Source: Paragordius varius
Taxonomy: Eukaryota > Animalia > Nematomorpha
Length of the DNA: 64,000 nucleotides
Direction of reading: 5' to 3'
Assembly (NCBI GenBank): GCA_964247055.1
Contig: OZ176053.1
Coordinates: forward strand, 5,766,001 to 5,830,000
Under the pieces are notes generated by a model. The model was given only the letters and a program-made list of their open reading frames with translations, was not told the DNA's origin and searched no databases. Position numbers and translations under genes: made by a program. How positions within the stretch are numbered: position 1 is the first letter of the stretch; each line of letters begins with the position of its first letter. This document shows positions 10,834 through 56,714 of the stretch, piece after piece.

Positions 10834-27257
<16,424 letters not shown>

Positions 27258-30742: not shown

Positions 30743-30999
30743 TATGTTGATATAGGCTAAACGTTGTAAAAAAATAATATATATAAATAATGCAATTTAT
30801 GGGCAAATTTAAAATGTTTGAAAACCAATTTACAAAAATTTTGATGACAAAACAATAAAAACCATAATTTGACGCTAAAATTTAATATAACATTAACTTA
30901 AAATTAAATAAAAACACTTATTATTTAAATTTTCATAAAATAAAAACTGTTAATTAAAATTGTTGCTTTTGCTTAAAAAAAATGTTTTTTTTGCATAAA

Positions 31000-31330
31000 A
31001 AATGGTATCTTTACAGAGTAGGAATAAGACCAGCTCTAACCTATGGATCTGAAACTTGGGCATTAAACAAAACTAATCAAGCAAAATTCCTAACTAGTAA
31101 GAATTGAGTACTCAAAAGCTGCTTCCATACACCAGAAATACCAACTTTCTTTAAAAAATCGATTGTATCATCCAAACTAATAGATTGCGTATCTACGGAC
31201 ATACTAAAAGAAGAAAAGGAACCCAACCCTTTAAAAACTATTAACATTAATATGATAGAAAAAAAAGAATCGACCACTCTTTTCTTATCATGATTATATG
31301 AAAATGGACTTGAATCAAGGTAGCTTTACG
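31000..31330 (+). mobile_element. 3' fragment of an RTE-like non-LTR retrotransposon
   Basis: It translates as YLYRVGIRPALTYGSETWALNK, matching the post-RT P-x-L-x-YG-x-ETW motif of RTE-clade LINEs, and is then interrupted by a stop. Confidence 0.65.
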
Positions 31331-31746
31331 ACAGAACAATAAAAAGATCGTAAGTTGTAGCGGGAATTTTTTTGTGGCCAGAAAATTCTGAATCCGGAGT
31401 CAACCTTACCTCCCTACTTACCCTCATTAATTAGTAAAAATTACAGAATAGTAATGTTCGAAACAGAAATTGATAAGACAGAAAAAGAAGAATGAACTTA
31501 GACATACGAGGTCTAACTAAATTAAAAGATATTTGGGATGCGAAGGCAAAAACAAAATATATTTAAAACATTGTTTACTAATGAAACCATATTTTTCATT
31601 TTTTATTTGACACCGTTTTAATACTATAACTTCATATATCGTATCCTATTTATTATATAGAATGCTTTTTCTACTAAATGTTTATAATGTTGCATTATAT
31701 CGGTCTCACATTAACATTCCATCAAAATGTCTAATCTAAAATTATA

Positions 31747-32483
31747 CTAATCTTGATAGGTCTTGTAAAGTGCCTGGCTGTACCTATCAACGGGATCCTT
31801 CAAATCATTCGAAAGAGTGTAAAGATTATTAGCCCAGTTTATGTGTAATTTCATATTTTTGACTTCATTATTTGATAACAATTCCAACTCCTTTTTCTCC
31901 GACTTAATATGTTTCCCTAGTAAATAGGCCAAAGAAGATTTAACCAATCCAACATTACACATGGAAGATATTTTTTTACTTTTGTATGGAAAATATAAAC
32001 GGCCGTTTTTTGGTTCAAAATATAGAAGTTCAGGTTTAAATGGCTGAGTAATCGTTGTATTGTTGCATAAAAAGTGATAATCATTTTTTGTAATAACAGA
32101 AGAATCAGTAAAACTAATATTAGTAATTGATTCGACTAGATCGGTAAAAACGATAGGCAGATCATCACACCGCGTATAATTTGACTCCCCTAAACAGGTA
32201 TATAGATATGGAAATTCTTTTTCATAAAATCCTGTTCTATTGAATTTCAATTGCCTAAAAAATAATGTTAAGAATTTTTGATCTTAAATAAATAAAATTT
32301 TACCTTTAAAACAAGAAGTAAAATTTTTCATCCTGGCATCATCCAAAAATAGCTTTGCATTACAAATTAGAAAACTTGTCCATTGTGATCCACATAATAA
32401 AAATACTCCCTATTTTTGCCTAATACCTGTCCTTGCTTATATGAAATTTTACGGAACACGTGTTTTGCATAAGGTGTAATCAT
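31747..32483 (-). CDS. C8orf82: UPF0598 protein C8orf82 homolog, 3 exons, 230 aa
   Basis: Exons are 32483-32376, 32352-32304 and 32282-31747. The spliced protein reads SYKQGQ...REYFYYVDHNGQ|LFLDDARMKNFTSCFK|DQKFL..FF...NRTGFYEKEFPY...CLGESNYTRCDDLPIVFT...NGRLY...VGLVKSSLAY, colinear with my recollection of the UPF0598 family. Confidence 0.9.
32283..32303 (-). other. 21-nt GT-AG intron (GTAAAATTTTATTTATTTAAG)
   Basis: Removing it restores TSCFK-D-QKFL. Retaining it reads through to an in-frame TAA. Confidence 0.8.
32353..32375 (-). other. 23-nt GT-AG intron (GTTTTCTAATTTGTAATGCAAAG)
   Basis: Removing it restores DHNGQ-LFLDD. Retaining it gives an immediate TAA and a frameshift. Confidence 0.8.
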
Positions 32484-35400
32484 AAAATGGTAATTGGCCT
32501 GTAAGTTACCTTTAAAAAATACTTAACACTGTTATCTTTTAGGGTAGTCGACACTGATTTCGAATATCTTATAACAAATTTAAATAAATCTTTAGCCCTT
32601 CAAGCACATGATTTGAAAATATATTTTAAAAATATAAAAGCAGCCATTATTTTCTATGGATAATATTGAAAGACAATACAACAGGCATATAATATATATG
32701 TAAAAAAATGAAAATATTTAACTTGCATGATGCATTTTGCAGAAATTTTTTCGACTCACATATTTTAGATCGAATTTTGGAAACACAATGGACAGAATTC
32801 AGAAAACCATAACAAATCTATTTTTATCTTGATCCGTTGATGATGCTAAAACTTGGGGCATCAACTTCCTAGTGAAATATATATCTTATACTCATGTACA
32901 TAAGAATTGTTATGTTCTTATTGAAAATGAGCCCTAAGAGGGATGCTATAGCCACCCTTGTGGTACTCACTCCATATAATAAATTGCAGAATATGCCCGC
33001 ATTCTACTAAAAAAATAATTTGTTGATAGTCAAACGCTTTATTTCAAAAATATTATAAGATACATCAAATACAGTTTCCATCGTGCGTCAAAATTGTATT
33101 ACGTACGCTTCTTCTTATAAAATTTTTGAGTTGATATTGAAATTCAGCAATATAAAATTTTTATCGCGCAATCTCGGAATTGTTTAAGATAAATAGGCCA
33201 TTTTGAAGCGAAAAGCTTAGATTTCCGACCCCACATCTAAAAATTAAATTTTTTTAAAAAAAAATGTGAATATTATAATAATTTAATCTTTAAAATCATT
33301 CAGCTTTCTCAAAATTTAAAATATTTTGATTTTCTGATATGGATCGGTTACCTTAAAAGTGGTAGTAACTTTCTTTTATCACTATAAACAAAATTAATTT
33401 TTGGTGTTTCGAAGTATTCATTAAAATGTGAAATGAAATGTGTTATCGTTGACCATAAATAGGTGTGGATAATGTTAACCCTATTTTAGCTTTTTATAAA
33501 ACCTAAAAAATTTAAACAATAGAAAATTTTTGTCATCATTGTTATTAAATTAGTTTGTTAATTTGTACTAGCAATATATTTAACGTGTTAAAAAATTAGC
33601 TAAATCCCATATTTTTTTAAAAAAAATGATTGTTTTGAACCAATTCTGTTTGGGATTATCAAATCATCAAAGTTTTAGGTTATAGCCTAGAAAGTTGTAA
33701 CATACGGATAATCTGTTTGTTGTGTTTTTTTAAATAATCGTCTATATAACGCTTGACACCCAATATATGATTACAATATGCATTGTAATGGTTGCTTATT
33801 TCACACTTAAATTGGGCAATTTGCAACACAGTAGTGTATGAAGAAAACAACAAAACGTTTAATAAACAATTATTTCCTTTCTTTTTCCTTCCTGTTTACA
33901 AATTGCCCTACTATAGTTTAAAATAAGCAACAATTAAAATGCATACCGTAAATTCTGAAAATTTATTATTGCCCCTATCTAAAATTGAGTTACCACGTAC
34001 AGATTTTTTGACGTACTATCAATATTCAATTTCAATGGTGGCTATTTGATATATTTAGCGGCATCCAATTTCGTGATAGTGTTTTCAATTATTGAGATAC
34101 AGTATTAAGAAAAATACACCAAATTGCTCCGTACTTTTGCTAAAATCTTTGCAATAAATTTATTTATATAGTAAAATTTGAATTACAATTTTTATCGTAT
34201 AAATTCGGCATTTTTACGTAAATTTTAAGGACAGGTACCAGATGCTAATAGTCAAATCAAAGGCATATATTTTTACTAAATTTTTTTATAAACTAAATCA
34301 ATACACCTGTGATCAGCTTTATTACTATTTTATATTTAATAAAATTTAAAGTTTACCGATATTCATATGATTAAACATACAGTGAAATTTTTTCTATTAC
34401 CAGATAGCAATGCAGTTAAGAAAATTATTTTAAAATAATAATTTGTATTCTCGTAAAATTTATTAAATTCAAACTATATCCAAAATTTTCGATACACTCG
34501 TTGACAATATTAAGAGAATTATTTTTGGCTACTAACAAGGATAATTAATTCTCTTTAATTTAGATACTATCTGGCAATAATTAAGGAAAATTAGCAATGC
34601 ATTACTCATACAGATTTATTATTGCACGGGTCCCTTCCCCATATTAAGATATTAAATAGTACCTATTATCTAATAAACTCGTGCTGATCCTCGTTCACTT
34701 TTCCAAGTTTTAAGGACCATATTTTTAATCGTTCAAAGTTTAAAAAATGCCTAAAAAGCTACGAGTTTATTATACTCCCGCAAATGAACCAAAAAAATAA
34801 AATTTTTCATTTTTTATTATTTTTTAAAATTCTGTAGGATTATCATTTAAAACACCAAATAATTGTCAAATTTTAATCAAATAATTTTAATTTTTATTTA
34901 TAACGCATGTTTTTTCCTTCCTCACAATCGGGTTCAATATGGGCGATGGGGGGTTTATTTGACATTCAATGAAAATGAATGTGCAGTTTTCATTTTATTT
35001 TTTCAACGATAAAATAAAACTAGAGATTTATATGCTAATGGAAATCGAAATTTTTTATGCAGGCTACTAAAATGTATAAGGTCAGCATTTAAATTTGATA
35101 TTTATTAATAAAAAGCATAATACGGAATAACCCATCCTAAAAATAACTCAATCCTTATGATCTAATTAATATAAAAACTTAAAATATCCATAATATTCAA
35201 CCCAATTTTTGTATGCAAAATATGATTTTATATAACGTTTACCATGACCTTTAGATTCAAAAATTCCCAATCTAAAAAAACTATGATGTAATAAATACAT
35301 AAAATATTTGTTTAATATATAAATGGTATTGCCTACCCTAAGTTGATTAAATGCTTAAAATAGTATGGAGGATGTATTTGAAAAAAATCAATATTTGATT

Positions 35401-35717
35401 GTTTGATATCTATATATTTGGGTTTATTATAATATGATTATAATAAATTTAAACTATGATGATATTATTAATAAAGTTTGATAGGTTAAACTTATCAAAA
35501 AATAATTTTATAAAATATTTGAAATGCGTCAATAGGTAATGTAAACATTGACAATTTTACAAGTGTTCCGGTTCAAGTAGGTATGGGGTGTATGTAACCT
35601 TTCGAGAGGCTATGTTTCAATATTTGTTTTGGCAAATATCTTGTAAATGCCTTATAATATTGACTCTGGTGAGTGAAGCTAGGCAACGATAGGTTTATAA
35701 GATATAACCAAAAAGGG

Positions 35718-35725
35718 TATAAATA
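35718..35725 (+). promoter_or_regulatory. Candidate TATA box of 8-Cys paralog A
   Basis: GGG-TATAAATA-AG lies about 75 nt upstream of the ATG at 35798, with an Inr-like CCAGT about 35 nt downstream. This is weak evidence in such AT-rich DNA. Confidence 0.35.
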
Positions 35726-35797
35726 AGAGTCATTTTTTAATCGACTTTATTTTTTCCAGTTTTTAAAATCACATCAAATTCCCCCATCTATCTTAAC

Positions 35798-36589
35798 ATG
35801 GTTGCCTACGAAAAAACGAATATGTTTATAATGTCCCTAATTATGTCAGGTAAAAATTATTATTACGCAATTTTTATTTTCTTAATACTCATACAATAAT
35901 TTTAAATTAAAAATTAACAAAAAATTCTGCCTTTTTAGTGTTCATCACACTTGGTCATGGTCAAACTTGCCAGGGGCCTGAATTCACAGGATTTCGCGCT
36001 ATCACTTGCACACGGTATGTGAATAATTTAAATGTTTTCTATCAAATTATTTTGAAAATGACAAATTATAAAATAATATTTTCATATTTTAGGCTTCTCC
36101 AAATTAATTTCATTTTCTTTTTATATACTAACTAGAGGTCAAATTGGATGCATTGACGGAGTACGATACGAACATTGTGGCTCTGTAAGACAATTATTAT
36201 TATTTATATATTGGAGAAGCTTTGTTAAAATGATTTTAATTAATAATCGCATTAATTATTTTAGTTGAATCCAATCGGCGGGCAAGAAGCCAACAATAAT
36301 TTGTGTCGTGATCAATATGATGAAGGTGATCACGTTTACGTTCCACAAAGTAAATCCATTTCTTTTTTTAAATTCGATTAGATTTTTTCTTAACAAAAAA
36401 ATAAAATTCAGAGTCTCTAATATATTGGTAAAGATAGATAAAAATGTGTAACTTTTTATAGATGATTGCACTCTTGCGTGCAGAAACACAGGGACCGGGG
36501 CAATGGAAAATTTTGGGAATGTAGTAGATGGAACCTTTGTCAATGGTGGGAGGATGTGCATTAATGGAGACATTTACGCATTTCAGTAA
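35798..36589 (+). CDS. Small secreted 8-cysteine protein, paralog A
   Basis: Exons are 35798-35849, 35939-36014, 36136-36184, 36265-36349 and 36462-36589, all phase-consistent. The protein is MVAYEKTNMFIMSLIMSVFITLGHG-QTCQGPEFTGFRAITCTRGQIGCIDGVRYEHCGSLNPIGGQEANNNLCRDQYDEGDHVYVPQNDCTLACRNTGTGAMENFGNVVDGTFVNGGRMCINGDIYAFQ*, with a hydrophobic leader. Confidence 0.8.
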
Positions 36590-38582
36590 GTCTCATCTGC
36601 ATTTCTAATATAGATGGATATGAGAACACATTTTAAATAAACAGTGTGCCCAATTTTTTTTCAGGGGACTTTAAAGGCCCTTTTAAAAATTTTGTTTTTT
36701 CGATTATTTTGCTGTTAAAGTTTCATAATATAAAACATTGTCATCTAAAATACGTTTGACATATATCAATTCTTCATTACATTTTCCTTAATTTTTATAT
36801 AAATACAGTTAGGGGCATTACAATAAATAGAGTCTTTTAGCTTTTCGTCCAAATTTTATTCATTTTGTGGTGTTTTTTATACCAAAGGCTCAATCATGGA
36901 AAGTTATGGTCAAAAAATTTTGGCCAAGCACTTCATTTTTAACCATATAACTGAAGTTTAAAATTTAGACAATTTAATTTAAAAAACAAGCCGATTTGAC
37001 ATAATTACCGAATTGTCAAAATGCATTAAAACTCTTATTATGTATTTAAAAGTATTTTTAGCCATTTGGTAAATACTAAATATAATTTTAGCGGCAAATA
37101 GCTAAAGAGGGTGAAATTATAAATATTTATGATTTTTTCTTTTAATAATGCGCCTAAAAAAGAATGCATGTTTTTTATCTGTAGTATTATGGTCATATTA
37201 TGAAATTTGAGATATAAAATCGCTATGTGATTGAAAACTACCCCCTAAATGCATATTTTTTTACCCGTAGCAAAAATTTCATACATTGTAATGTTAGATT
37301 TATACCTTTTTTTGTATTTTAGATTTGGCAATCAATTGAAAAGAGTTGGTATGTGCTTTATTATAGATATTTTTTACGAAATAATTTATATATATATATA
37401 TCAAGTTTAGTATTATTTTAAGCAAGGTGTTCTCGATGCATATATATAATAAATATAAATTATTATTTGATATACATCATAATTTTTATGGTGAATTCCC
37501 GGCATTATGCTATTAAGATCAGTTTGTATTTAATCTTGAGATTGCAAACATTGCGCGCATTTATTGTTGGTCAGATCAAATTAAATTAATTAATTACCTT
37601 TTTGAATTTTATTTAATAATAAAATCAAAACAAGCTTGTTACAAAAAACACAGTGTTCAAAAATCGCGAAAATTTATAAATTCCCCCAAGAATTTAAATT
37701 AACATGCGCTATATTTCGTAAATAAAATTAATATTTTGAGACACTTAAATGGATTCACATTCCGTTATTTATAACTTTAGATATTTGCCATAAAGTTTCC
37801 TCAAACTTTTTTAAATAATTACCCAAATTCCTAAATCTACAATAAATATTAAATTGAAATTTCGAAGCCAGCTATAAAAAAATTGCAAAACTAAACTTCA
37901 TTATAAATATATCTATATAGTTTTTTATCACTTAACGCCATTTAGTTAAAATATAAAAAATATTTTACTTGTTAATTTTTAAAAAATTTGACTAATCATA
38001 TTGAATAATTTAGGTTAAAAATAAATTTTTAAAATCTGTTTTAATTCACGATTTATCGAAAAATTACACAAATTTATATGTTGTCCTAAAATAATTGTTT
38101 AGAGTATAGATTCTGCTAATATTATATATTGTTTAAATTTATGATTGAACCAAATCAAGAAGTTGCCGTTTTGTGCTATTTAAGCTTTATTAAACAATTC
38201 TTACATAAAGTATCTTACGTTTCTTTTACTAATTATTCTAAAAACTAGGTAAAAACATAATTCATGTACAACTAAATTCTGGGAGCCGAATAAGGGAAAA
38301 ATTCAAAAGAGCTTTGACGTAGTTCTACCAGAGCGATTTTATGATAAGATCTTTGATTAACGGCTAATTTATCTTATAATTTTTATATCCAGGCGTTTTC
38401 ATAAGCAATTTTTGATCGGATCTAATATAAAAACATGGGTATTGCAACCCATAGTAATATTTTTTAGCCTTTTTAAGAAAGTAAACGTTTGAAAAGTGCC
38501 CATATTTGAAAAAAGACCCCAAATTATTGCTACACATAAATGGATTATAGATCAATAACATATTTTATGTTTTATTGTTTAG

Positions 38583-43392: not shown

Positions 43393-45989
43393 CTATTTAC
43401 AAATGAGTAGTCGACGAAATTGGGTAATCATATTATTATCCAATATTATATATACATACATAATAATGGCTCCATATATCATCTGTAAGACATTGCCTAC
43501 AGAAGAAAGATCATAGGAGAGTTGGAATTTTTTCAAAAGTAAGATACGTAAATTGCTACGCGTTATATATAATACGACATTCGGTGTCACAAATATGATA
43601 TAGATAAGAGAATAAATGAGAGCCGAATAGTTGATTAGTATACTTTGTGCCCTGTGAGCTTTACGTGATGACATTGATTTCTTAGCAACTACGTTTGAAG
43701 TGGTAGGATTGATACGATTATACCGTACCATAAGATCAATGTCTGATTTAAAAACTGCATAATAATATTGGTATGTATGTTTTTTCCGCTTAAACCAATT
43801 CCCAGTATTGGCTGATTCGTCTACTGGTACCATACATACAGATGAAGTGTTTCTCTCATCCATTTTACTTGAAGATTGAGGATTTGAAATGACTCCCGAT
43901 ATGTTATTTATAGTTGTTGGTGCATTGTTTTTATTTATGTTTATGTTTGATGTACCTGATGTCATCATCAACAAATTCCTTTTCCGATAAAAAATTATAA
44001 TTAATTGCGTCAAACAAAACCCCAAATAGATATTGAATATTAGCGGTATAATCATCATAATAATCATGCGAATGATATCGTAGGCCACCACCCTGGGTGT
44101 CAAATCCTTAAGGCCACACCGATATAGCTTTATGAGTTTTAGCGGCTTTGGATACAATGATTTAAACCCGGTCCCATTTGACACTAGAAGACAATCCTTT
44201 TGAAAACAGTTGGATAGTTGGATAAAGTATATTGGTTGTGTTCCATGCAATTCTGGTGTTATATTATAATAATTGACATAACTTTCAAACACATTAAAAA
44301 TGGCCTCATTAATCGAACTGTTTGGCTTAAGTTTGGATCTTATATTATTCCCATGTAGCGTAACGAATTCTCGATGAGGTAGGCGAACGCTTTTTGGTAT
44401 ATTTTGACTATCAAGGCCAAAGCACATTACCGGATCATACCAGAAAAATGTTGTCCAACTCAGAAAAAATGATAAAACAATTATTATCCATGGGAACCAT
44501 TTGAAATGACATGCCTTCCTTACATCATCATATTTGGTGTAAAACCTAGCCTTCAAATATCTGTCCAATAGAAGTAACACCTATAAAAAATAATGATAAC
44601 ACAGATAAAAGGTTGTTTTTGTAAATAAATTAAACATAAATATGAATAATGCAGCTTATGGGATACAAAAATTTAATTTTTTCCAATTTAATAATATCCG
44701 CTATTAACGCTAATTCTTCTAACAGGCATTTAAGTTAAGAAAAAATCATCCTCAATAATTATTAGCCCCCCATTATAGCTCTTCAGGTGGTATTTGGTTT
44801 TAAACCCCTCTTAGTTTTTACAGTTCCTCCAGTTAAAATAAAGACAAGCCGATTGAAAAAATGATAAATATATAGTATTATTGATAATAAAAAATTGGAT
44901 CGATTTTTTGTCTTTTAAGCTGTATTTTAAAAACTATTTTGCATCATCCCGGAAAAATGTCTTTTTTTTAACCAACTTTGATGCCACCAAAGATATTTGC
45001 CTTTAATTATTTTATTTGGAATTCGATTATATTGTTTGTGGGCATATGGCACAGGAATAAGTTCTGAAATAAAATTACTTTCTTTTAGATAGAAATTAAA
45101 TTATTTATGCTGCGCTTGATGACCTTACTCGTCTTCACAGGGAAACTGATAAAAAAATATTATTTTCACTTACATGATACTCTGTGGATTATATGTTACA
45201 TATTAATTATTATTACGATTTAAAATTCAAATAAAGGTTTGCTGAATGATTTTATGAATATTTAAGAGCAAAATAAAATAAACATACATTTATTAACTAG
45301 ATGACAGGGAACGACTGATATTTATTGAAAATGTTCTAATTTTAATTGAAATCAGGACCATTTTATTTTTTTTATCTGATATTAATTAAAAAAAATACCT
45401 GTATCCATATACTGGCATCAAAAAAAACATGGACCCAAATGATATCATATTTGGTGGTATATTTGACCCATCCTCGATTAGTCGTAAATTCGGATAAACG
45501 AAACCATTTATTGGCAATATCAAAGTATATGGGTATCATGAATAGGGCACTCAATAGTAAAAGCCAACCAATAAACGCTATATAATAGTAATTATTTGAG
45601 TTTTTTTTAATATTTTTGGGAATACGATGAATAATAACTAATCCTGTGATAACCCCAAATAATCCTATAACCAGGACAATCGGCATGGCTATAACATATA
45701 TTGCGCGCGTCAATGAGAATCGTTTTTCATAATTTGAAGTGCATAGAGAATCGAATAGAGGAGTTTCCACCGGATTATGGTTTGTTTGTGGAAATGAAGC
45801 GTATAAATATGATAGACCATTCCTTGACGAAGTTAATCTTTTTAAATGTTGCGATGATGGTGTAATAGGGATCGCATTAGTACTACCCGTTTGATAAATG
45901 TGATCAAGATTAGCACCAACAAATTTCATATGCATGAGATCTGTCATGCCAAACCCCGTCCCGTTTCCGTTATAATTATCTAGGCTCAT
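43393..45989 (-). CDS. Divergent class A (rhodopsin-like) 7TM GPCR, peptide-receptor-like, 2 exons
   Basis: Exons are 45989-45399 and 44580-43393, with a phase 0 intron in TM3. There are seven hydrophobic helices, DRY after TM3 (VLLLLDRY), a TM5 proline (IIPLIFN) and a TM6 proline (FVTPN). The first in-frame ATG is at 45989. Confidence 0.85.
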
Positions 45990-46519
45990 GACGACAAAAG
46001 TGAACAAATAATTTTACCAATGAGTATTAAAATCAAACCGCCATTTATTCGTAAAAAACCAATTTATTTTATTTAAATAATAATTAATTTTTAATTAGCA
46101 AAAGAAGATGGAATAATTTATATAAGTTATAATACGATATTTTAGTGTTAATTAAAATTAATCAAAAAACTATATACTTTTACAATCGTTTGTTGAGCAA
46201 CAGGGTAAGATATTGCGCCTTGGCTCATTTGTATTGCATTGTCATATCCAAGTTATCCATTGGTTATCATATAATTAAATTTATGAAATTGATCTAAATG
46301 GATGAAACGGTTTTGTTATTATGTTTATTTTTCAGTATCTTACAGAAAACTGTGTTAAAATGCGATACATATTATTAACAGAGAAAGGTTTGAAAAATAT
46401 ATTTAGAGCAGGCTACACTTTATATATTTTATACATTTGTGCGGTTTAGATATATTGTGTTCCGCTAAATTAGTAAAAGTGGCCAAAGTATGATATCTGT
46501 TTTATTTTGGTATTATAAA

Positions 46520-47650
46520 TTTGGTGTGTTCAAAATTTTCCAACGGTTTAACAAGAGCAGACCTCAGAGAAAGACGCAGACGATTAATTTGACACAGACT
46601 CCATTTTATTCATATATTAAGACCAACACACACAAGTTGACTCGACCAAAAACTAGCGTCTTATTCCTATCATCAAGTAATCATGTCGAATTTTGTGCCT
46701 GAAAAAGATTTACATCACGCATTGCCCTTCTTGTTCCATCAGAAGTAAAAAACTGTGGAAAGTCATTGTTTGCTGGTAGAAATAGTCCAAGCATGGTTAA
46801 TAATATTTAAAAATTGTTATTTTTTGAAAGCAAAAGGGCGCACTGCTACACCACACAAATGCGAACACGATAAAGTGCAAGAGTTATTGGATGATTATTC
46901 AACGCATCCTCAACGGCAATTTGCAAACTATGATATGTATCACAAAAATTCTGTAACGTCTACAAGCAGTGGGAAAAGACCAATAAACTCGGTAAATATT
47001 GAAAAAAAAAGGTAAAATCTAAAAAGTGAATTGTGTTGGCTCAAGGTTACGAAAGGAGATAATTTGAATTGTTTGGGTGATGAAAAGTGGATTGATTTTG
47101 TAATAAAAAGCCAAAAATCATGGCTTTCACCTTACCAAACTAACTGTCCATACCCCAAGGCCAAATCGTTTCGGCAAGAAAACCATGCTATGTGTCTGAT
47201 TTTGTAACCTACTGAAACCGTTACATAACGCTATCGCCCACAAATGCTAATTTAAACCATGAATTAATTGAACAACGATTGAAATTGGCCAGGAGAATGG
47301 TAAAATTATTTGGCTGCATTAAAATGATTCATCTCACGCAGAAAAACCAGTGAAAGGCACCTTGAATTCGCTTCGGGAATTTCTTCCGCATCCTTCGCAC
47401 TGACCTGGAACCATATGACTATTACCTCCTTGCATCAATGGGGCTTACGCTCGTGGAGCAGAACTTCAAACGTTGGAAAAAGATTTGACGAATGTTTGCA
47501 GAAAATCAGTTTTTTTGGTATGGCGTTCATATATTACTTACAGACGGGCGAAGTGTGTGGAACCCGTACAATATTTTGAATAAAATAATTATTGCTTTTC
47601 TATCGAAATTGCTTGTTTTTTTACCAAAAAAACTGGTAAAGATTTATAAT
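46520..47650 (+). mobile_element. Decayed mariner (Mos1/mauritiana-like) copy 2
   Basis: MSNFVPEKDLHHALPFLFHQK..ESHCLLVE, GDEKWIDFV, RPNRFGKKTMLCV and DLEPYDYYLLASMG..L.EQ.F. The TIRs are degenerate. Confidence 0.88.
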
Positions 47651-48636
47651 CAGGTAGTCTAACGCCCTTTTTTCCTAAAAAAATTTTTGGTGTGTGTAAT
47701 CGTTCCACATGGCTTTCAACGAGTTTAAATAACTGAAAGACTAAAAAGTTATAAAAGTTGGCTCTAAAATATTAGAAAAATGTAGGTGTCTCTTAGAATA
47801 CAAGAATCATTTAAAAGGTTGATATGATTTCTGAACCTGTTATTTTCCTGATACTTTTTAAAATGTTGCATGTTATTATAATAAAGCGGCCCTTAAAATA
47901 AAAATATTGACCTTTGCCTTTATAAGAATAAAATAATCTTTAGAATTCGCTCACAAATCTTAAAAATATTTTTCAGGGATTGAACAAAACTGTTTGATTG
48001 TTGTCTCTGGTTCCATTTCCACATAATAGATAAAACACAGCATGAATAAATCATAGCCATTTTCAGATAGTTTGATCAATTTAACAAACGTAAATAATTA
48101 GCACAAAAATATAATGTAAACACCAAAAATTATTCTTATCTCAAACCATATAAAAATTTATACTTTATGCAATAATAATTTATCCATTATATTAAGAATA
48201 GTTAAAAGAAAAACATCCATTATTCAAGAACGGTATGAAACCGTTGTTTTTTCCTTATATTAAAATAAACGACTCTGAAGGCAATGTTTGACGTTTATCA
48301 AATTTAATTAAATTTCATCGTAGTTATACATTTACCATGATAAATAAAACCATTTTGAAACGGTCAGGATCAATCAGAATCGGTTAAAATCCGAATCCGG
48401 TTGCTGCCGGTCCAGAGATTAAAGAACAATCTTATACCATTTTTGTGAGACCTTTTAGCCAAGTTAAATTCGGTATAGAAACGGAAGAAAAGAAAATTCT
48501 ACTAAGTATCCAATTTGAAATTAAATAAAATATTATTATTTTATGAAGCACATATCACATTTAAACCATCATTCACAAAATTTTATCGGAATTTATTATA
48601 TTAAACTTTGACAATTATGTATATATATATATATAA

Positions 48637-48677
<41 letters not shown>

Positions 48678-49036
48678 TATATAGAATATGTGAGACATAT
48701 ATTACATATTATCATAATTATATATTGCAAATAATTATTACATATAATCCAAATATTATTTAAAAAAACATTAGAAAATTTACAAAATGGTGACGCATAG
48801 AATATTTTTAGTCGAAAATTGTTGACAACAATATGTTTAGACATGTAATACATATTCAAGATATATATAAGATAGATATATTGGGCTGTGTAATGAGGAT
48901 TGGAATGTTTTTACGAATCATATTTAATAGAGAGCAATTTCAAGTCTTTTCAACACTCTGTGGACATAAATCTTAAAAATCTAGATTATCCACTTATGTT
49001 AAATTTTTAATATTACTTGCTAACTATCGTCATTGT

Positions 49037-52000
49037 TTAAATTGAATGTTGCGATGTAGGATACATGTTGTGGTTTCCTGTATTACTGAATGTCGTATTA
49101 TTGCTGAAATTTGACAAAGATTTTATCTTTGGACCTTTTTGTGACCTTATGATGGTGCCATTATCACCGTTTCCGCTCATGACGAATTTAAATTTGCGAC
49201 CCCTTCGTTTTTTCATCTCTTGACTAGTCCAAATGCTTGATTTATAATTAATCGTTTTATTACCTAACGATGAATATTTTTTTAAATTGATACCATTTAT
49301 CCCAGATTTTTCAAGCGGTTCTGGGTTCATGGTAACTTCAAACAAGGCATTTTTTTCTTTGGTATGATGTTCTAAATTATTTGTGTTGCAATCGTTACGT
49401 GTTGGTAAAACATTGGGATTATCCTTAAATTTCTTATAATCACGAAATATTTTGCGGCGACGATCAATTTTTTGAAGCGTGACAGGTAGGGGTCGAATTG
49501 CACTTTCAATCGCAGATTCTGCAATCGAAAATGAATCAGGATGAGGTGATGTAGTAAATTTTTCATTCTCTTTTAACCTTTCTTTGGGAGTATTTGTGCA
49601 TATTGCATCGATTGTTTCCGATTCGCTCATATCTCTTTTAGGTTGATCATGATTGATGCGTTTTTTAATCAGACAAGTTATAGAATTTTCTGAGTTCTTT
49701 TTGCTTATATTAGATCCAATATCTGACTTTTTGTCCGGATTTTTCAAAGGTTTATAAGAATTTAATGAGGCATTCAAATGAGGATTAAGATTTTTGTGAT
49801 TATAGTAAATTGTTTTAGTATTGTTACTCAAATTCTGAGTTTTTGCGTATTTTGGATTGGTTTGGCAAATTGGACATTTCCAAATACCTTTGAAAGATCT
49901 ATTCACACAAAATATTCAATATGTTTGATGTATAATATTATAACAAAATTATAATCCCTAAACACAAAAATATGTTTAAATTTTAAAAAAGTCCACACTT
50001 ATTCATTACACACTATAGAGAGCAATTAGATTTGGGTAGTTTCAATAGCTAAAGAGGTTCAAATTATATCTGCTGGTAAGTATTAGGCTTTTCATTTTTA
50101 TTAGTTACATATTTAAATTATAATTGTGGAGGAAATATACAGTTGCCCCTGTCATCAATGAAATATCATGTTAGCAATAATTTTAATGTAATTAAAATAA
50201 ATGAAAATTCTTATACATATCAACCGACATGTAAATTATAAATACCCTTTTAGCCATGTACAATATCGAAATGGCAAATAATAGTTCCCGTTATGATAAT
50301 ATACATACCTCTGTAAAATAGTCCTTGAATTGAAACACCTTTCATGAAAATGTCGCAGGCATTTGTCACAGCGTACTAATTTTTGTTTTGATTGTCCACA
50401 GATGGAACATAAATTTTCATTGATTGCCTATAAATAAATTTAATATATATACTTCGAATTCTAAAATGGTTTTTTTAAAAAATATTTTTTTACACAAAAA
50501 ATTTGTAAAAACCTTTGAAACACAGGAATAACAGTACCAGTCACCGGATGGAACTTTGTCTATTGCAGGCTATATTTAAACAATGAATATCATGTTAAGA
50601 ATGTAATCGACAAAAAGACTATATATATTATCCCATAAATTTATAAGTAATGATTATATTAGTACTTTAAAACAGTAGGTATGATAACCCTTATCACAGC
50701 CATCGCACAGTAATAGTAGATCTTCGTCAGAACCCAAATGACAAAATTGACAAAACTATGGAGGAAAATGATAAATTTATGTACAAATATATATACACAA
50801 TTAAAGTGTTGTTAAGTTAAAAAAATGCAGTTACCACTTTTGTGATAGATTTTTCCCAAGCAATTGCACTTTGAAGTAATTGTAGACAAATGTATATTTG
50901 GTCGGTATTTTTGGCATTGGTTAAGGCCAACTTCCATTTATATAAATTGGATGAAGTTTGGGCATACGAGTTTGTACCATTATCTTCTTGTAGGTTATTT
51001 AGATTATTTGGCTTATTTGAAACATCATTAGATTCACTGTCGCTGAATTGATTTGATGAGTTAACTATATCATCTTGAGGAACTCTAAATGGTTAAAGAG
51101 TAATGATAGGTTTATTAGTTTGTAAAATTAGTAAATTCATTAATATATTACATTATGTTTTTATCACAGTGAATATGTGTATTTTGGTCAAAATCGGTGA
51201 TTTCTTTAGGGATCATTTCTACTTTTTCTTCCATATTCTCTAATTTGCGGTCTGTAACCGTGTTTTCAAGCGTTTTTGCCCTAATATTGTCAAACTTTCC
51301 ATCTTTTTTTAAGGTATTGCTGTTATACCAATTAATTATCGCTTCATAATCTTGTAAATCTTTCGTTCTAAAAAATAGAAACAAAAAAATTTAAATATAA
51401 AAATATGATTACAAAAATTTAATGGATCATACAAAATTAAATATAAAAATAATTCAAAAATTTAATGGATCATCTTAAAGGTGGATATAACTTACGGCCT
51501 GCAAAGCGGTGAGCGTAGAAATCTTCTATCAATCCCAGAAACTAAGTCCAATAACTTTTGTCTGGTAGCGGAGAAAATTTCATCATTTCCGACATCATTG
51601 ACCAATATGTTGGGAATAGGTTTATGCGTCTTAATCCACGCCTATTGATTTATTAATAGTTTTGTTGCAAAAATTATTTATACTTAAAAAATTGTTTTTT
51701 TTAAATATATATATAATGTGAATACTACCTTGCTCATAAAATTTGACGTTATGACTTTGTCTTCGAAGCGCTGAACTGTCTTATAAGCATTTGTATGATA
51801 GATTTTAAGGAAATTTTCCGGTTCAATTTTTGCCTCATTATTACTGGACAGCTCGTGAGATTTGATATATTCTGCAACTAAACAAAAGTATTAAAATAAA
51901 TTTTAATTTTCCAAAAACTTATAATAAAATTATAAAGCCGCCACCATGATAAAAACAATAAACAAATATTATATTATGATTAATTGAAATAAAAAATTTT

Positions 52001-55000
52001 CAAATTAGTTACATTGATTGGAAATTAATTTTCCGTTTTCGCTTTTCGGTTCTAAGGGATACATTTGCAACAAAACATCCGTTATTTTTTGCATATTTTT
52101 ATACAAAATCTTTTCCCGAATACCACGCAGATTTAAACTGCTCATAAGATTATCCAATTGTTCCCGGGAATCAATATACCACCAATTGTTTTGATAATTG
52201 GACGTTAACAAATTGTTTCTGTCAGTATCTTCTATAATAATAAAATATATTAAATTATATAAAACGTTTTGAATAAAATCAATTCTAAAACAACAATTAA
52301 TATCAAAATATTTGATAAATATACCTTCTTTACCATTGTTTGTCAATACACCGTACATATTTATAAGACTTTTATCTAGATTTGCAACATTGTTTTGTTC
52401 TCGTTCATAATTAAATCCTTCAATGAGAATAGCACCGATTGAGGGCATAACCTATAACAAATGTCATTAGTAAAATGAAAATTTAATTACTAATTATTTG
52501 AATCATTAATGGGATACAAATCAAAACAAAAGCATGCTTTACCCAATATATTCTTTTATAACGGTCAGTCCCAAGTGACATACAACGTAATCGTGTGTTA
52601 ATTTCGTATAATTGCATGCGATACATGCTTAAACGATCTTCTGGATGTTGGATTTCGGATTCGCACCGTCTTTGATCAGATTGTGAGGTCTCTTCTTTTG
52701 GATGATTGGATTTTTCATCGGTTGTTATATTACTATTTACGTTCTTTCCATTATCACGCGTATCATTCTTTTCAACCATTGAATTCTTCTCTCCGTCAGT
52801 TTTTATAGTAACTGGTTTGTATTCAATTTCTGATGTGGATTTCGTCATATCTTGATCGACAAATTCTGATTTAACGCTTGGTTGATCGGCTATCTTAACG
52901 GATTCGTCGTGGGTATTTTCTTTAACAATGGTGGAAATGGGATTGGAAACAGTATTTTCTATTAAATCATCCTCAAATTTTACAGATTTTTTCGTCGATT
53001 TATCTACATCAATGTTCTCATTGTGATTTGTGGTTGACTTTTTAAAGGCAATATTATTGGTTATCGGATCAGAATACCGCTGTCTAAATATGGATAAACA
53101 AGAAAATCGAGTATAAAACCTATATGTCGGTAATATATATGTATGCAACATTTATTGGCTAAATGGAAAAAAAACAGATATTTACTTCCTTAGTTGACCG
53201 CCCTCATTAAGCCATTTGTCCTTTTTGAGATTGGCCATGATACCAAGTCTCCTATCTAACTCACGCAAAATGTCAGGATGGTCTAACAAACGATCACATA
53301 GAAAGGCTAAAAGCCAGCATTTTTGTTCAGCTTTCAATAGATGGAGCGGTTGAAGTGATAAAAAATCTGTAATCTATAAGGCACCACACAAATTGTGAAT
53401 TATATATATATATATATATATTACATCGGATGATCGATTGTATAAAGAGATAGAAAATTAATATACTTCAACGCTCATTGACGATGTTTCTCCATAGCAC
53501 GTATCATTGTATATGGTGAGATATATGCGTACGATTTCACTAATATTACTTTCACACAAGCCAAAATCTTTGACAGATTTTCCACCCAAGAATGTGAAGG
53601 TCTATGTATGCATTAAAAAATATTTTTATATCAGAACAATAAAAATACATTAGGAAGATAAAGTAAAACGACAAAAAGATTAATAATTTAAAAGCAATAA
53701 TCGATTATACTACCCCCAAGTCATAATTGTATCGTATATCTAGACTAGATGTAAAAGTCACAGTTTTAGCACATGTATCCTGGAAATTTTGTTCTTTTAC
53801 TGTCTCCTGGTTATTTTCATTTTCACGAAAATCTTCATTTTCGGTTTGAATTGTAGAGCACATATCGTTGCTATAAACACCTCCGTTGTTACAATTGCTA
53901 TTGTTAATGTTAATAAGTGTGGTGGCATTAGCTAACAGCTCATTATGTTTCAACAAAAATTGGACGAGTTTTAGAACGATTTTAATGAAAGCTTGGAAGG
54001 GCATAGCCAAAAGTAATGTATTGCTTTCATCGTTTTCATGTAATTTTTCCATAGCACAACTTTTATCAGTGATTACAGGTTCGTCTTTAACCATGTTAGA
54101 TTTGGTTTTTATATCATCCCCATTTATGATATTTTGACAACAAATTATGTTTTGGAGTTTATACAAAGTGTAATTAGTAGGACCTAATAAAATGTTATGG
54201 AATGATTTATTTAATATAATGCGCTTTAAAGTTCATAAATGATAGCAAATACTTCAAATATAATTCTTACCAATATGAAGGACATCAGAAAAACTATGCA
54301 AAAATTCGGTGACCATGACGAGATCGGAAAAGTGTTTGGGCGAAAGTTGCATATTAGGTATGATTGGGAAATCGGGCAGGGTCTATTTTATTTAAATAAT
54401 ATTATAATATGATATTGGAAACAATAAGATATAAATATTGGCGAATCAGAATTAATGTTCAATATTGGAAAAGTGTATTGAAACCTTAGAGTTTTGCATG
54501 ATTTCAAGATCATCTTTGGCTTTGTACATATCTTCAAAACTAAATCCTATGTTTTGGTGATCAGTTGGGTTTTGTGATATATCTAGACTATTATCTTTTT
54601 TGTCATTTATATTGAATGTTTCATTATTGGACATATTATTATTTGACTCGAATTCCGATGTTAAAGTAGTAATATTTTGGGTATTAATTATTGGTTCGAT
54701 TGTTGTGTTATTAGGTTTGGAATCTTGCTGGTAACAAACAATATACTTATATAATAAGTCATATTCTTTAAAGTAATTTTTCAAATATTATATTAATGAT
54801 AGGAAATTATCAAATATTTAACAAAGTTTTTACTCTGAATAATGCATATAGATTTCAATTATTTTTAATAAAAATTACCACGTCTTTTAAGGTTGAAGAT
54901 AAGTTGCGATCCATATCAGCTGCTTTATTGCATGGCGATTGAGCGTCATTTTGTTCGACTAAACTATCAGTGTGTGATTTACATTCAGAAAGGTTATCCG

Positions 55001-56683
55001 AAAAAGCAAAACTATCGTTTTTATTTAATGTTGGCTCAATTTTTACATTACCCTTAATTTGATCATTACCGTTTTTGTCATCCGAATAATTAGGTGCAGA
55101 AGTAGTAGTATTATCTTTTCCCAAAAAACTATTTCGATAAAATTTGGAATAAAACATTGCGTTACAGTTGTCATCTTTTTTCTTGGCACCATTTTCTGTT
55201 ACGTGTGAGTAAGCGATAGATGGGGCCGAAATAGATTGTGGCGGTGTGTCTGTGGGATCAAATATAGTTTTTTTGATACGGCCAGCCCGTCGTTTAACGC
55301 TAAAGAAACTGGAATGGAGTGTTTGTGATTCGGATTTTACATAAAGATCATGTCCGCTCCCGTGTGTCGAATTTGTCATGGTTGCATTTTGATTAGGAGC
55401 AAGATTATGGGCAGATGATGTATTCGTAATCATAGCGTTATCTGAGCCACAATTTTCTGCAATGAAAAACATGGAATCTGTTTCTGTCTTGACACTTGAT
55501 GACACACTATTACCATCTATATTGTGTTCAGCAGCAATGGTAAAAGGAGTACAATTTTTGTCATTATTAATGTTTCTACCAATCCTTTTTATGTGTGAAT
55601 CCATAACGTGCCCAAAAGTTGTGAAAAATGGATGGTTTGCAAAAATTTCAACTGAACTTTCCTTCTCCATGACCGCTGAAAGTTCGGTAAGATTGGTGGA
55701 GTTGAGAGATAGTGCATTCCGTTCATTCACAAATATATTATGTAAATCATCCTCCCTTATTTTAGGGGAATCGGATCCATCAACAGTATTATGTTTAGCA
55801 TCGACATTTTCAGCGCCTTTTACTTTGTTCTCACTTGCACAAAATGCGTCCAAAATGTATGTAAGTAAATCTTTGGTTTCTGACTCGGTATAAGCGATAA
55901 GGTTTTCCTATATATATATTGCAATGTTTTAAATCATAACAACTATTATTAAAAATAGACATTATAAAAATTGTCAAATGAAATATATGTATACCTCTGG
56001 ATCAAGCGGATTTTCCCGATAGAAATCACCCAACAAAGCCTTAGAACTAAAATTAAAATGTTGCCGTGAATTCAATTCGGAGATCCAATTGTAAGTCACT
56101 AAAAAGATATAAAAATATACATGTATATATATGATTATAATTTATGATTTCAAACCGTAGTCCTGAAGTATATTTGGCAAAATATGCTTTGCTAAATTAT
56201 AACCGTCTAATTATCCATCGTGTTTTACGCCAAAAAAACATTTTAAATATAATTTTTGATTTTTCCAATAATTATTTTTGGCCAAGACACAGTCCGCTTT
56301 AAAATCAATTTTTTAACAGTTTTAGGATTTACGCATGTACACTACTTATTTAAAGGTAAAATTTTAGATCATGGTGAAAAAAACTCTATTCGTGTATCTA
56401 CTTCTGTGAGATGATTCCATAAAAGCTCGAGCCTTATCAAGCCGATCCAAATATCTATCAACATCTTGGTACGATCTCAACTTTTTACCACATGGACTGA
56501 GGTATACGACTTCCCCCTTGATAGTTGCCTTCAGGCCCCGAACTAAATCCGCAGCACATGCTAACTCTTTCAATTGATCCGATGAGTTGTTATGGAATGT
56601 TAGTGGGTTAGAAAATAATCGGCGTATTTTTATCGATCTTATTATGGTTTTGCGCTGAAAACCTCCTGTATAAACATAATATA

Positions 56684-56714
<31 letters not shown>

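What the first reader, a model, noticed from the sequence alone, without database searches (positions are those of the whole stretch)
32283..32375. Two ultra-short spliceosomal introns (21 and 23 nt) in an animal gene, in a genome region where other introns are about 70 nt or longer
The conserved C8orf82 peptide REYFYYVDHNGQ|LFLDDARMKNFTSCFK|D is broken at exactly two places by GT...AG inserts of 23 nt (32353-32375) and 21 nt (32283-32303), flanking a 49-nt exon. Both give an in-frame TAA if retained, including the 3n one, so they must be removed for an intact 230-aa protein. The exons carry no other lesions. The shortest of the ~50 other introns I mapped here is 71 nt (14144-14214). Introns of 20-25 nt are known from ciliates, nucleomorphs, microsporidia and dicyemids, where they are genome-wide, and are below the usual size limit for the animal spliceosome. 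Their coexistence with conventional introns suggests a second micro-intron class with its own recognition mode, or micro-intron retention as an NMD-coupled switch (inference). The only CTAAT branch-like motif lies 6-10 nt from the 5' splice site.
Basis: partly seen in the sequence, partly recalled or inferred. Interest (0 to 1): 0.9.

Follow-up and report, generated by a model that had tools for sequence, protein, structure and literature searches.

The report
Two tiny introns in worm gene
An intact, conserved animal gene in this AT-rich worm genome is split by introns of only 23 and 21 bases, at the exact spots where corals, birds and wasps have introns of 63 to 1,448 bases. They are almost certainly real introns that shrank far below the usual animal size limit, but no RNA was available to show them being cut out.

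Summary
On the minus strand a DUF4505/UPF0598 (C8orf82) gene is read as exon 1 (32483-32376), a 23-nt GT..AG insert (32375-32353), a 49-nt exon (32352-32304), a 21-nt GT..AG insert (32303-32283) and exon 3 (32282-31750). Removing both inserts gives an intact 230-aa protein. It matches a profile of 23 orthologs with no gap at either junction (203 bits).

New evidence: a coral, a duck, a wasp and an unidentified eukaryote have introns at the same two positions and phases, with the same 49-nt middle exon. Their introns are 63-1448 nt. The worm inserts are therefore ancient introns that shrank, not lesions.

- DNA contigs of the same organism cover the site at flat depth.
- A contig from a ~96% identical relative spans both inserts without a gap, which rules out assembly collapse.
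- Four variants in exon 3 are all synonymous, which argues against a pseudogene.
- Other introns in the window are 67, 71, 93 nt and longer, so the two size classes are real here.

No RNA evidence was obtainable. A separate recognition mode and an NMD switch remain untested.

This scan has flagged the same micro-intron class on many other windows of this genome, which earlier notes call a horsehair worm. I found no publication reporting it for that phylum.

The parts
32376..32483 (-). Coding exon 1 of the DUF4505/UPF0598 (C8orf82) ortholog. It runs from the ATG at 32483-32481 and ends ...REYFYYVDHNGQ in phase 0.
   Evidence: Translation. Pfam DUF4505 profile positions 1-21. An in-frame stop lies 13 codons upstream of the ATG.
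32353..32375 (-). Micro-intron A, 23 nt, GT..AG, phase 0. It holds CTAAT at positions 6-10 and ends AAAG. It is 26% GC.
   Evidence: The coral, duck, wasp and L002 orthologs have an intron at the same position and phase, 63-1140 nt long.
32304..32352 (-). 49-nt exon 2, encoding LFLDDARMKNFTSCFK plus the first base of an Asp codon.
   Evidence: A 49-nt exon of the same content is present in the coral, duck, wasp and L002 loci. The profile match is gapless across it.
32283..32303 (-). Micro-intron B, 21 nt, GT..AG, phase 1 (G|AT). Its 5' splice site is AAG|GTAAAA and it ends TTAAG. It is 10% GC.
   Evidence: The coral, duck, wasp and L002 orthologs have an intron at the same position and phase, 64-1448 nt long.
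31747..32282 (-). Exon 3, coding to 31750, with the TAG stop at 31749-31747. It encodes the rest of the DUF4505 domain, including RCDDLPIVFT and GLVKSSLA.
   Evidence: Pfam DUF4505 profile 39-176, E 1.3e-30. Four variants in a DNA contig of the same organism are all synonymous.
31602..31654 (-). Two AATAAA hexamers (31654-31649 and 31607-31602), 93-140 nt after the stop. They are candidate polyadenylation signals; this is inferred only.
   Evidence: Sequence. No RNA support.

Best explanation
These are two genuine U2-type (GT-AG) spliceosomal introns of the single-copy-looking DUF4505/UPF0598 (C8orf82) gene. They are orthologous to the two introns this gene has carried since before cnidarians and bilaterians split. 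In this lineage they have shrunk to 23 and 21 nt, while the 49-nt exon between them stayed unchanged.

The functional mRNA must lose both to encode the conserved 230-aa protein. Removal is most likely by intron-definition splicing with minimal signals: GT at the 5' end, an A-rich stretch just before AG, and no polypyrimidine tract. This matches what is described for the tiny introns of dicyemids and myxobolids.

Shown here: the DNA, the ORF, the homology, the positional orthology, the conserved lengths in a close relative, and the size gap to the other introns in the window.

Inferred: that the spliceosome removes them, which branch point is used, and that they belong to a genome-wide class. 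That last point rests on earlier notes of this scan on other windows of this genome.
For: 1. Exact GT..AG inserts whose removal gives an intact 230-aa ORF.
2. Pfam DUF4505 positions 1-21 fall on exon 1 and 39-176 on exon 3, so the gap equals exon 2. An HMM of 23 full-length orthologs matches the spliced protein in one domain, 202.8 bits, E 2e-64, gapless at both junctions (alignment).
3. Intron positions, phases and the 49-nt exon are identical in Orbicella faveolata (introns 347/565 nt), Aythya fuligula (1140/1448), Trichogramma pretiosum (63/82) and a metagenomic eukaryote (77/64). For the coral and the duck these boundaries reproduce the annotated protein exactly.
4. DNA contigs of the same organism cover the site at flat depth, with no indel or joint listed there. 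A 212-nt contig from a ~96% identical relative spans 32203-32414 with 8 substitutions and 0 gaps.
5. Four nucleotide variants in exon 3 are all synonymous. Exon 3 is 178 codons open at 27% GC.
6. Conventional introns of 67, 71, 93 nt and over 1 kb lie in the same window.
7. Both micro-introns end in an A-run before AG. The same feature is described for the <30-nt introns of myxobolids and Dicyema (PMC13644364).
Against: There is no RNA evidence. Two RNA-labelled runs with the same species label laid nothing on 31400-37399, and no close ortholog from a transcript exists in either protein library.

Intron A has a weak 5' splice site (CAA|GTTTTC). Both 3' sites are AAG, which is disfavoured in ordinary animal introns (my knowledge).

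Intron B has no recognisable branch motif. In intron A the CTAAT branch candidate is only 8 nt from the 5' end.

The read laying tables were truncated (35 indels and 116 variants not shown), so the absence of a variant exactly in the inserts is not fully proven for the same-organism run.
Confidence: 0.85

Rival explanations
1. The introns are real, and their retention is a regulated, NMD-coupled on/off switch for this gene.
For: Keeping either intron gives an in-frame TAA. Tiny introns are spliced inefficiently in microsporidia (cited in PMC13644364).
Against: An in-frame stop within 7 AT-rich codons is expected about 46% of the time by chance, and the 23-nt intron shifts the frame anyway. No RNA data were available. 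The earlier notes describe the same size class in many housekeeping genes, which fits a general property of the genome better than a gene-specific switch.
Confidence: 0.08
2. The spliceosome mainly sees one conventional 93-nt intron (GT at 32375 to AG at 32283) and skips the 49-nt exon. The locus would then yield mostly a frameshifted, non-functional mRNA, and the tiny introns are used rarely or never.
For: 93 nt is a typical intron size in this window; SPCA intron 1 is 93 nt. A 49-nt exon is at the lower limit for exon definition (my knowledge).
Against: Exon 2 is 13/17 identical to the wasp exon and matches the family profile with full posterior support. Exon 3 is open and shows only synonymous variants. 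Neither would be maintained if exon 2 were skipped, since skipping shifts the frame.
Confidence: 0.04
3. The locus is a decaying pseudogene. The two inserts would be small insertion mutations, with an intact copy elsewhere.
For: Both inserts interrupt the frame with stops. The protein is divergent from all known orthologs, at most about 40% identity over exon 3. No transcript was found.
Against: Random insertions would not both start GT, end AG and fall on the two ancestral intron positions and phases. My estimate of the chance is of the order of 1e-10 at this base composition. There is no other lesion in 230 codons. Exon 3's 178 open codons have a chance of about 1e-7 at 27% GC. The variants seen are synonymous only. 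The insert lengths are unchanged in a relative.
Confidence: 0.03
4. It is an assembly or sequencing artefact, in which longer introns were collapsed or short junk was inserted by the assembler.
For: None specific. The region is AT-rich and low in complexity.
Against: Independent k-mer contigs of the same organism cover 32200-32399 at normal, flat depth. A contig from a different, ~96% identical organism is collinear across both inserts with 0 gaps.
Confidence: 0.01
5. The inserts are removed by a non-spliceosomal route, either IRE1/XBP1-type or tRNA-endonuclease-type RNA cleavage and ligation, or DNA-level excision in somatic cells.
For: Their size resembles the 26-nt XBP1 intron (my knowledge).
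Against: The ends are GT..AG and sit at ancestral spliceosomal intron positions. The region has no significant RNA structure, z = -0.33. There is no Rfam match in the window. No DNA joint skipping 21 or 23 nt appears in the DNA runs.
Confidence: 0.01

Closest known systems
Ultra-short (<30 nt) spliceosomal introns of dicyemids (Dicyema japonicum) and myxobolid myxozoans (PMC13644364)
   Same: The size range is the same (median 22-27 nt there, 21 and 23 nt here). The ends are GT..AG with reduced splice-site motifs. A few A residues lie directly upstream of the AG and there is no polypyrimidine tract. The introns occupy conserved positions between conserved exons. The host lineage is parasitic.
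   Different: There, tiny introns dominate compact genomes and set the median. Here they sit in a window whose other introns are 67 nt to several kb, with retrotransposon remnants inside introns. The lineage is different: an ecdysozoan according to earlier notes, which I did not test. Neither lineage in that paper is a nematomorph, and the main text of its 51-genome survey does not mention one.
Bimodal short-intron system of parasitic flatworms (Gyrodactylus salaris, tapeworms; PMC4040987)
   Same: Two intron length classes occur within one genome. The short mode is concentrated at intron ordinal positions 1 and 2 of genes. Here the two micro-introns are introns 1 and 2, within the first 160 nt of the CDS.
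   Different: The flatworm short mode is about 32-36 nt, above the 30-nt limit, against 21-23 nt here. In this gene there are no later introns, so the positional bias cannot be tested on it.
Tiny introns of ciliates (Paramecium about 25 nt, Stentor 15-16 nt) and nucleomorphs
   Same: They show that a U2-dependent spliceosome can remove introns of 15-25 nt with a branch A only about 10 nt from the 5' end (Stentor is cited in PMC13644364; the rest is my knowledge).
   Different: They are unicellular lineages in which all introns are tiny, and they are not animals.
DUF4505 / UPF0598 family (human C8orf82, Drosophila CG30010)
   Same: The host gene is a full-length member. It has the same three-exon structure as the coral and duck orthologs.
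   Different: It is divergent, at about 40% identity or less over exon 3. It has a short N-terminal leader of 15 residues before the conserved SYxQGQ. It lacks the third intron found in the wasp.

Membership tests
U2-type GT-AG spliceosomal intron | GT at the 5' end and AG at the 3' end, with boundaries that restore the reading frame | tested here: met
   For both inserts only one GT..AG choice restores the frame.
U2-type GT-AG spliceosomal intron | Same position and phase as introns of orthologous genes | tested here: met
   Coral, duck, wasp and L002 loci: phase 0 after ...DHxGQ/M, phase 1 in the Asp/Glu codon after ...CFK, and a 49-nt exon in all.
U2-type GT-AG spliceosomal intron | Branch-point motif and polypyrimidine tract upstream of the 3' splice site | tested here: inconclusive
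   Intron A has CTAAT with its branch A 14 nt from the 3' end but only 8 nt from the 5' end. Intron B has no motif. Both have A at -3 (AAG) and no real pyrimidine tract.
U2-type GT-AG spliceosomal intron | Spliced form present in RNA | tested here: inconclusive
   Two RNA-labelled runs laid nothing on 31400-37399. No transcript-derived close ortholog is in the protein libraries.
Animal ultra-short intron class (<30 nt; dicyemids, myxobolids) | Length under 30 nt | tested here: met
   23 and 21 nt.
Animal ultra-short intron class (<30 nt; dicyemids, myxobolids) | Tiny introns are the dominant class genome-wide (median under 30 nt) | tested here: not met
   Within this window every other intron I checked is 67 nt or longer. 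The genome-wide distribution cannot be tested from one window.
U12-type (minor) intron | 5' /(A|G)TATCCTT and a TCCTTAAC branch site | tested here: not met
   The 5' ends are GTTTTC and GTAAAA, with no such branch motif.
IRE1-type unconventional intron (XBP1/HAC1) | Twin stem-loops with conserved loop residues at both cut sites | tested here: not met
   The fold of 32260-32400 is no more stable than shuffles, z = -0.33. The sequence is AT-rich and lacks the G/C-containing loop motif.
DUF4505 / UPF0598 (C8orf82) protein family (host gene) | Full-length match to the family profile above the curated cut-off | tested here: met
   Exon 3 alone scores 107 bits against a cut-off of 27.3. The spliced protein scores 202.8 bits against a 23-ortholog HMM.

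The most novel reading that the evidence does not exclude
This animal, a horsehair worm according to earlier notes of the scan, has a working class of 21-31-nt spliceosomal introns at ancestral intron positions, alongside ordinary 65-nt to multi-kb introns in a transposon-rich genome. That would be a third independent origin of <30-nt introns in animals. It would also be the first outside compact genomes, so extreme intron shortening would not need genome-wide compaction. The animal spliceosome, or a lineage-specific variant of it, would be handling two very different intron geometries in one nucleus. As a side effect, such introns defeat standard gene finders. This gene is absent from two very large protein libraries. 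Part of the reported loss of universal genes and the low BUSCO scores in nematomorphs could therefore be an annotation artefact.
Probability: 0.7. Interest if true: 0.8.

Novelty: new variant of a known kind. Interest (0 to 1): 0.68.

Why it matters
Introns under about 30 nt were long held to be absent from animals. A September 2026 survey of 51 animal genomes found them only in myxobolids and one dicyemid, both with compact genomes (PMC13644364).

Here two ancestral introns, hundreds of bases long in a coral and over a kilobase in a bird, are reduced to 21 and 23 nt. The neighbouring genes keep introns of 67 nt to several kb. If splicing is confirmed, several things follow:
- The lower size limit of the animal spliceosome can be studied in an organism that carries a built-in control class of normal introns.
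- Branch-point choice can be studied at a 5' splice site to branch spacing of about 10 nt.
- It becomes testable why the tiny class sits at gene starts, as in parasitic flatworms.

There is also a practical side. Aligners and gene finders with minimum intron sizes above 20-40 nt will break such genes, which bears on claims of gene loss in this phylum.

Tried and rejected
RNA evidence:
- Both sequencing-run searches gave only DNA-like holders, plus RNA-labelled runs of the same species label holding none of the words.
- The single read-laying run laid no contig of the RNA-labelled runs X6 and X8 on 6 kb around the gene. Splicing could therefore be neither shown nor refuted.

Close orthologs from transcripts:
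- The word-indexed search and the exhaustive representative search found nothing closer than about 40% identity over exon 3. No relative's cDNA was available.
- The DNA of the best hit's contig (P0001) could not be fetched.

Scan for further micro-introns:
- I ran a naive window-wide scan for GT..AG segments of 18-32 nt joining long open frames. It gave 88 candidates, against 79-140 for control dinucleotide pairs.
- That is no enrichment. The scan is also blind to micro-exon cases like this one, so it neither finds nor excludes more.
- A tempting 39-nt GT..AG segment with TACTAAT at 52490-52452 does not fit the reading frames. A 73-nt intron does.

Upstream coding exon: I looked by eye for one spliced onto exon 1. 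None fits the frame.

Rejected explanations:
- Non-spliceosomal excision: no structure, no Rfam family.
- Assembly collapse.
- Pseudogene.

Literature: searches for nematomorph or hairworm intron sizes found nothing. The Gordionus genome preprint never mentions introns. The 2023 Current Biology nematomorph genome paper is not in the library and was not read.

Organism: I did not verify its identity myself. It rests on earlier notes, and its GC of about 27% equals the 26.93% reported for one horsehair-worm genome.

Full report
**What is there**

The window is AT-rich, 25-33% GC. A gene lies on the minus strand at 32483-31747.
- Exon 1 runs from the ATG at 32483 and ends ...REYFYYVDHNGQ at 32376.
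- A 23-nt segment follows at 32375-32353: GTTTTCTAATTTGTAATGCAAAG.
- A 49-nt exon follows at 32352-32304. It encodes LFLDDARMKNFTSCFK plus one base.
- A 21-nt segment follows at 32303-32283: GTAAAATTTTATTTATTTAAG.
- An open exon then runs from 32282 to a stop at 31749-31747.

Removing both segments gives a 230-aa ORF. Keeping either gives an in-frame TAA.

**Is it more than chance?**

Pfam DUF4505 (the UPF0598/C8orf82 family) matches exon 1 at profile positions 1-21 and exon 3 at positions 39-176. The 17 missing positions are exactly the 17 residues that exon 2 supplies.

I built an HMM from 23 full-length orthologs retrieved. It matches the spliced protein in one domain of 202.8 bits (E 2e-64), with no gap and full posterior support across both junctions (MAFFT alignment).

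**The decisive comparative test**

I fetched the genomic loci of orthologs and mapped their exons. All four have introns at the same two positions and phases as the worm: phase 0 after ...DHxGQ/M, and phase 1 inside the codon after ...CFK. All four have a middle exon of exactly 49 nt.

| Organism | Intron 1 (nt) | Exon 2 (nt) | Intron 2 (nt) |
|---|---|---|---|
| Coral, Orbicella faveolata | 347 | 49 | 565 |
| Duck, Aythya fuligula | 1140 | 49 | 1448 |
| Wasp, Trichogramma pretiosum | 63 | 49 | 82 |
| Unidentified metagenomic eukaryote (L002) | 77 | 49 | 64 |
| This worm | 23 | 49 | 21 |

For the coral and the duck, these boundaries reproduce the annotated proteins exactly. Both also share the worm's three-exon structure. 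The wasp has one extra intron that the worm lacks.

The two worm segments are therefore the ancient introns of this gene, older than the cnidarian-bilaterian split and shrunk in place. Two random insertions would both have to begin GT, end AG and hit exactly these two positions. By my estimate the probability of that is of the order of 1e-10 at this base composition.

**Is the DNA right, and is the gene alive?**

Contigs of a run of the same organism (X1) cover the whole 6-kb stretch at flat depth, about 450-900 outside repeats. That is the behaviour of DNA. No indel or joint is listed at the two segments.

A 212-nt contig from a second organism spans 32203-32414 with 8 substitutions and no gap. 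That organism (X5) shares 0.34-0.40 of the 31-mers, which corresponds to roughly 96-97% identity. Both intron lengths are therefore the same in a relative, and collapse by the assembler is excluded.

An X1 contig differs from the window at 32025, 32026, 32028 and 32038. All four changes are synonymous: F134, L138 and L139.

Exon 3 is 178 codons open in 27%-GC DNA, which I estimate has a chance of about 1e-7. A pseudogene is very unlikely.

One caveat applies. The read laying tables were truncated, so I cannot state that no minor variant exists inside the segments.

**Context in the window**

Conventional introns are present.
- SPCA intron 1 is 93 nt, at 11048-11140.
The flanking exons continue the match to human SPCA1.
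- A WSD/PHD chromatin-remodeller gene on the minus strand has a 67-nt intron at 51151-51085, and probably a 73-nt one.
- SPCA also has a multi-kb intron holding a decayed retrotransposon, with RT and RNase H remnants at 19.4-20.7 kb.

The size gap between 21-23 nt and 67 nt or more therefore holds here, with 67 rather than 71 as the lower bound. SPCA's first intron is not tiny, so the tiny class is not universal at gene starts.

**Signals**

- Intron B has a good 5' site (AAG|GTAAAA). Intron A has a weak one (CAA|GTTTTC).
- Both end in AAG after a run of A and lack a pyrimidine tract.
- Intron A holds CTAAT at +6..+10. That puts the candidate branch A 14 nt from the 3' end, which is normal, but only 8 nt from the 5' end. 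Intron B has no such motif.
- The 2026 survey of animal micro-introns describes the same reduced pattern for myxobolids and Dicyema: GTa at the 5' end, bare AG at the 3' end, and two or three A residues upstream of the AG as the proposed branch site.
- The RNA has no unusual structure, z = -0.33. The window has no Rfam match. An IRE1-type or other structured excision is therefore not supported.

**What could not be shown**

No RNA evidence was obtainable.
- The RNA-labelled runs under the same species label held none of the words.
- They laid nothing on the stretch.
- No close ortholog from a transcript exists in either protein library.

Splicing is therefore an inference, although a strong one. 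The in-frame stops that motivated the second idea are expected by chance in seven AT-rich codons about 46% of the time.

**Relation to earlier notes of this scan**

The same genome has been flagged many times for 21-31-nt introns. These are mostly near gene starts and at conserved positions. The follow-up agents call the organism a horsehair worm.
- One follow-up (s1-305267) reports RNA of the same species showing tiny introns cut out of a gene about 1 Mb away.
- Another (s1-277267) notes a floor at 21 nt, which intron B sits on.

I did not test these notes. They are leads, not support. The organism's identity was likewise not tested here. The GC content of the window matches the 26.93% reported for Gordionus montsenyensis, which is merely consistent.

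**Relation to the literature**

PMC13644364 (September 2026) states that introns under 30 nt occur among animals only in myxobolids and Dicyema japonicum. Its main text does not mention nematomorphs.

My searches found no paper on nematomorph intron sizes. The Gordionus genome preprint does not mention introns. The 2023 Current Biology nematomorph genome paper is not in the library and was not read.

The nearest two-class precedent is in parasitic flatworms. Gyrodactylus has modes at about 32 and 58 nt, and the short mode dominates intron positions 1-2 (PMC4040987).

**Verdict**

- The reading as real micro-introns is very probably right (0.85).
- The mechanistic extras are untested.
- It is a new variant of a known kind: the size is as in dicyemids and myxobolids, but the tiny introns coexist with normal and long introns.
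- This instance adds clean positional-orthology evidence, and evidence from a relative's DNA, to a phenomenon the scan has already met repeatedly in this genome.

Noticed in passing
window 33600-34000 and 34400-34600: A very high-copy repeat. Summed contig word depth is 1e5 to 4.6e5, against about 800 for the flanks. There are many 'opposite strands' joints around 33814-33913, so it looks like a hairpin or MITE-like element. It is present in both organism A and the related organism B.
   Followed up: no
window 43393-58712, minus strand: A large WSD/PHD (BAZ/Toutatis-like) chromatin-remodeller gene with N-rich low-complexity exons. Its short introns are 67-73 nt, for example 51151-51085. Several carry TACTAAT or ACTAAT branch-like motifs.
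   Followed up: partly
window 52452-52490, minus strand: A 39-nt GT..AG segment with a perfect TACTAAT and a T-run looks like an intron but is out of phase with both flanking open frames. A 73-nt intron (52490-52418) fits instead. It may be an alternative acceptor.
   Followed up: partly
window 18400-20800, plus strand: A decayed LTR-type retrotransposon (RVT_1 and RT_RNaseH_2 remnants) sits inside a multi-kb intron of the SPCA calcium-pump gene. A further RT fragment lies at 30982-31107.
   Followed up: no
L007 720-1390 (Aythya fuligula C8orf82 intron 1): Intron 1 of the duck ortholog contains at least five tandem copies of the end of exon 1 together with its 5' splice site (GTREYF.YIDHxGQ|GT...). 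It is a ladder of duplicated donor sites.
   Followed up: no
L001 1-1439 and L005 1-123: In both the wasp and the coral, a WD40 beta-propeller gene lies head-to-head just upstream of the DUF4505 gene, which may be an ancient divergent gene pair. No such neighbour is seen within 3 kb in the worm window.
   Followed up: no
L006 (Clonorchis sinensis, P0021): The annotated fluke ortholog has an unrelated 59-aa N-terminus and a 9.5-kb intron, and lacks the conserved exon 1/2 sequence. This is probably a mis-annotated gene model whose real first exons were missed.
   Followed up: no
window 31747-32483: The worm's DUF4505 protein has no counterpart closer than about 40% identity in libraries of 5.8 billion and 1.84 billion proteins, and no self-hit. 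Either the genome's annotation is not in those libraries or it has missed this gene, as would be expected if gene finders cannot model 21-23-nt introns.
   Followed up: partly
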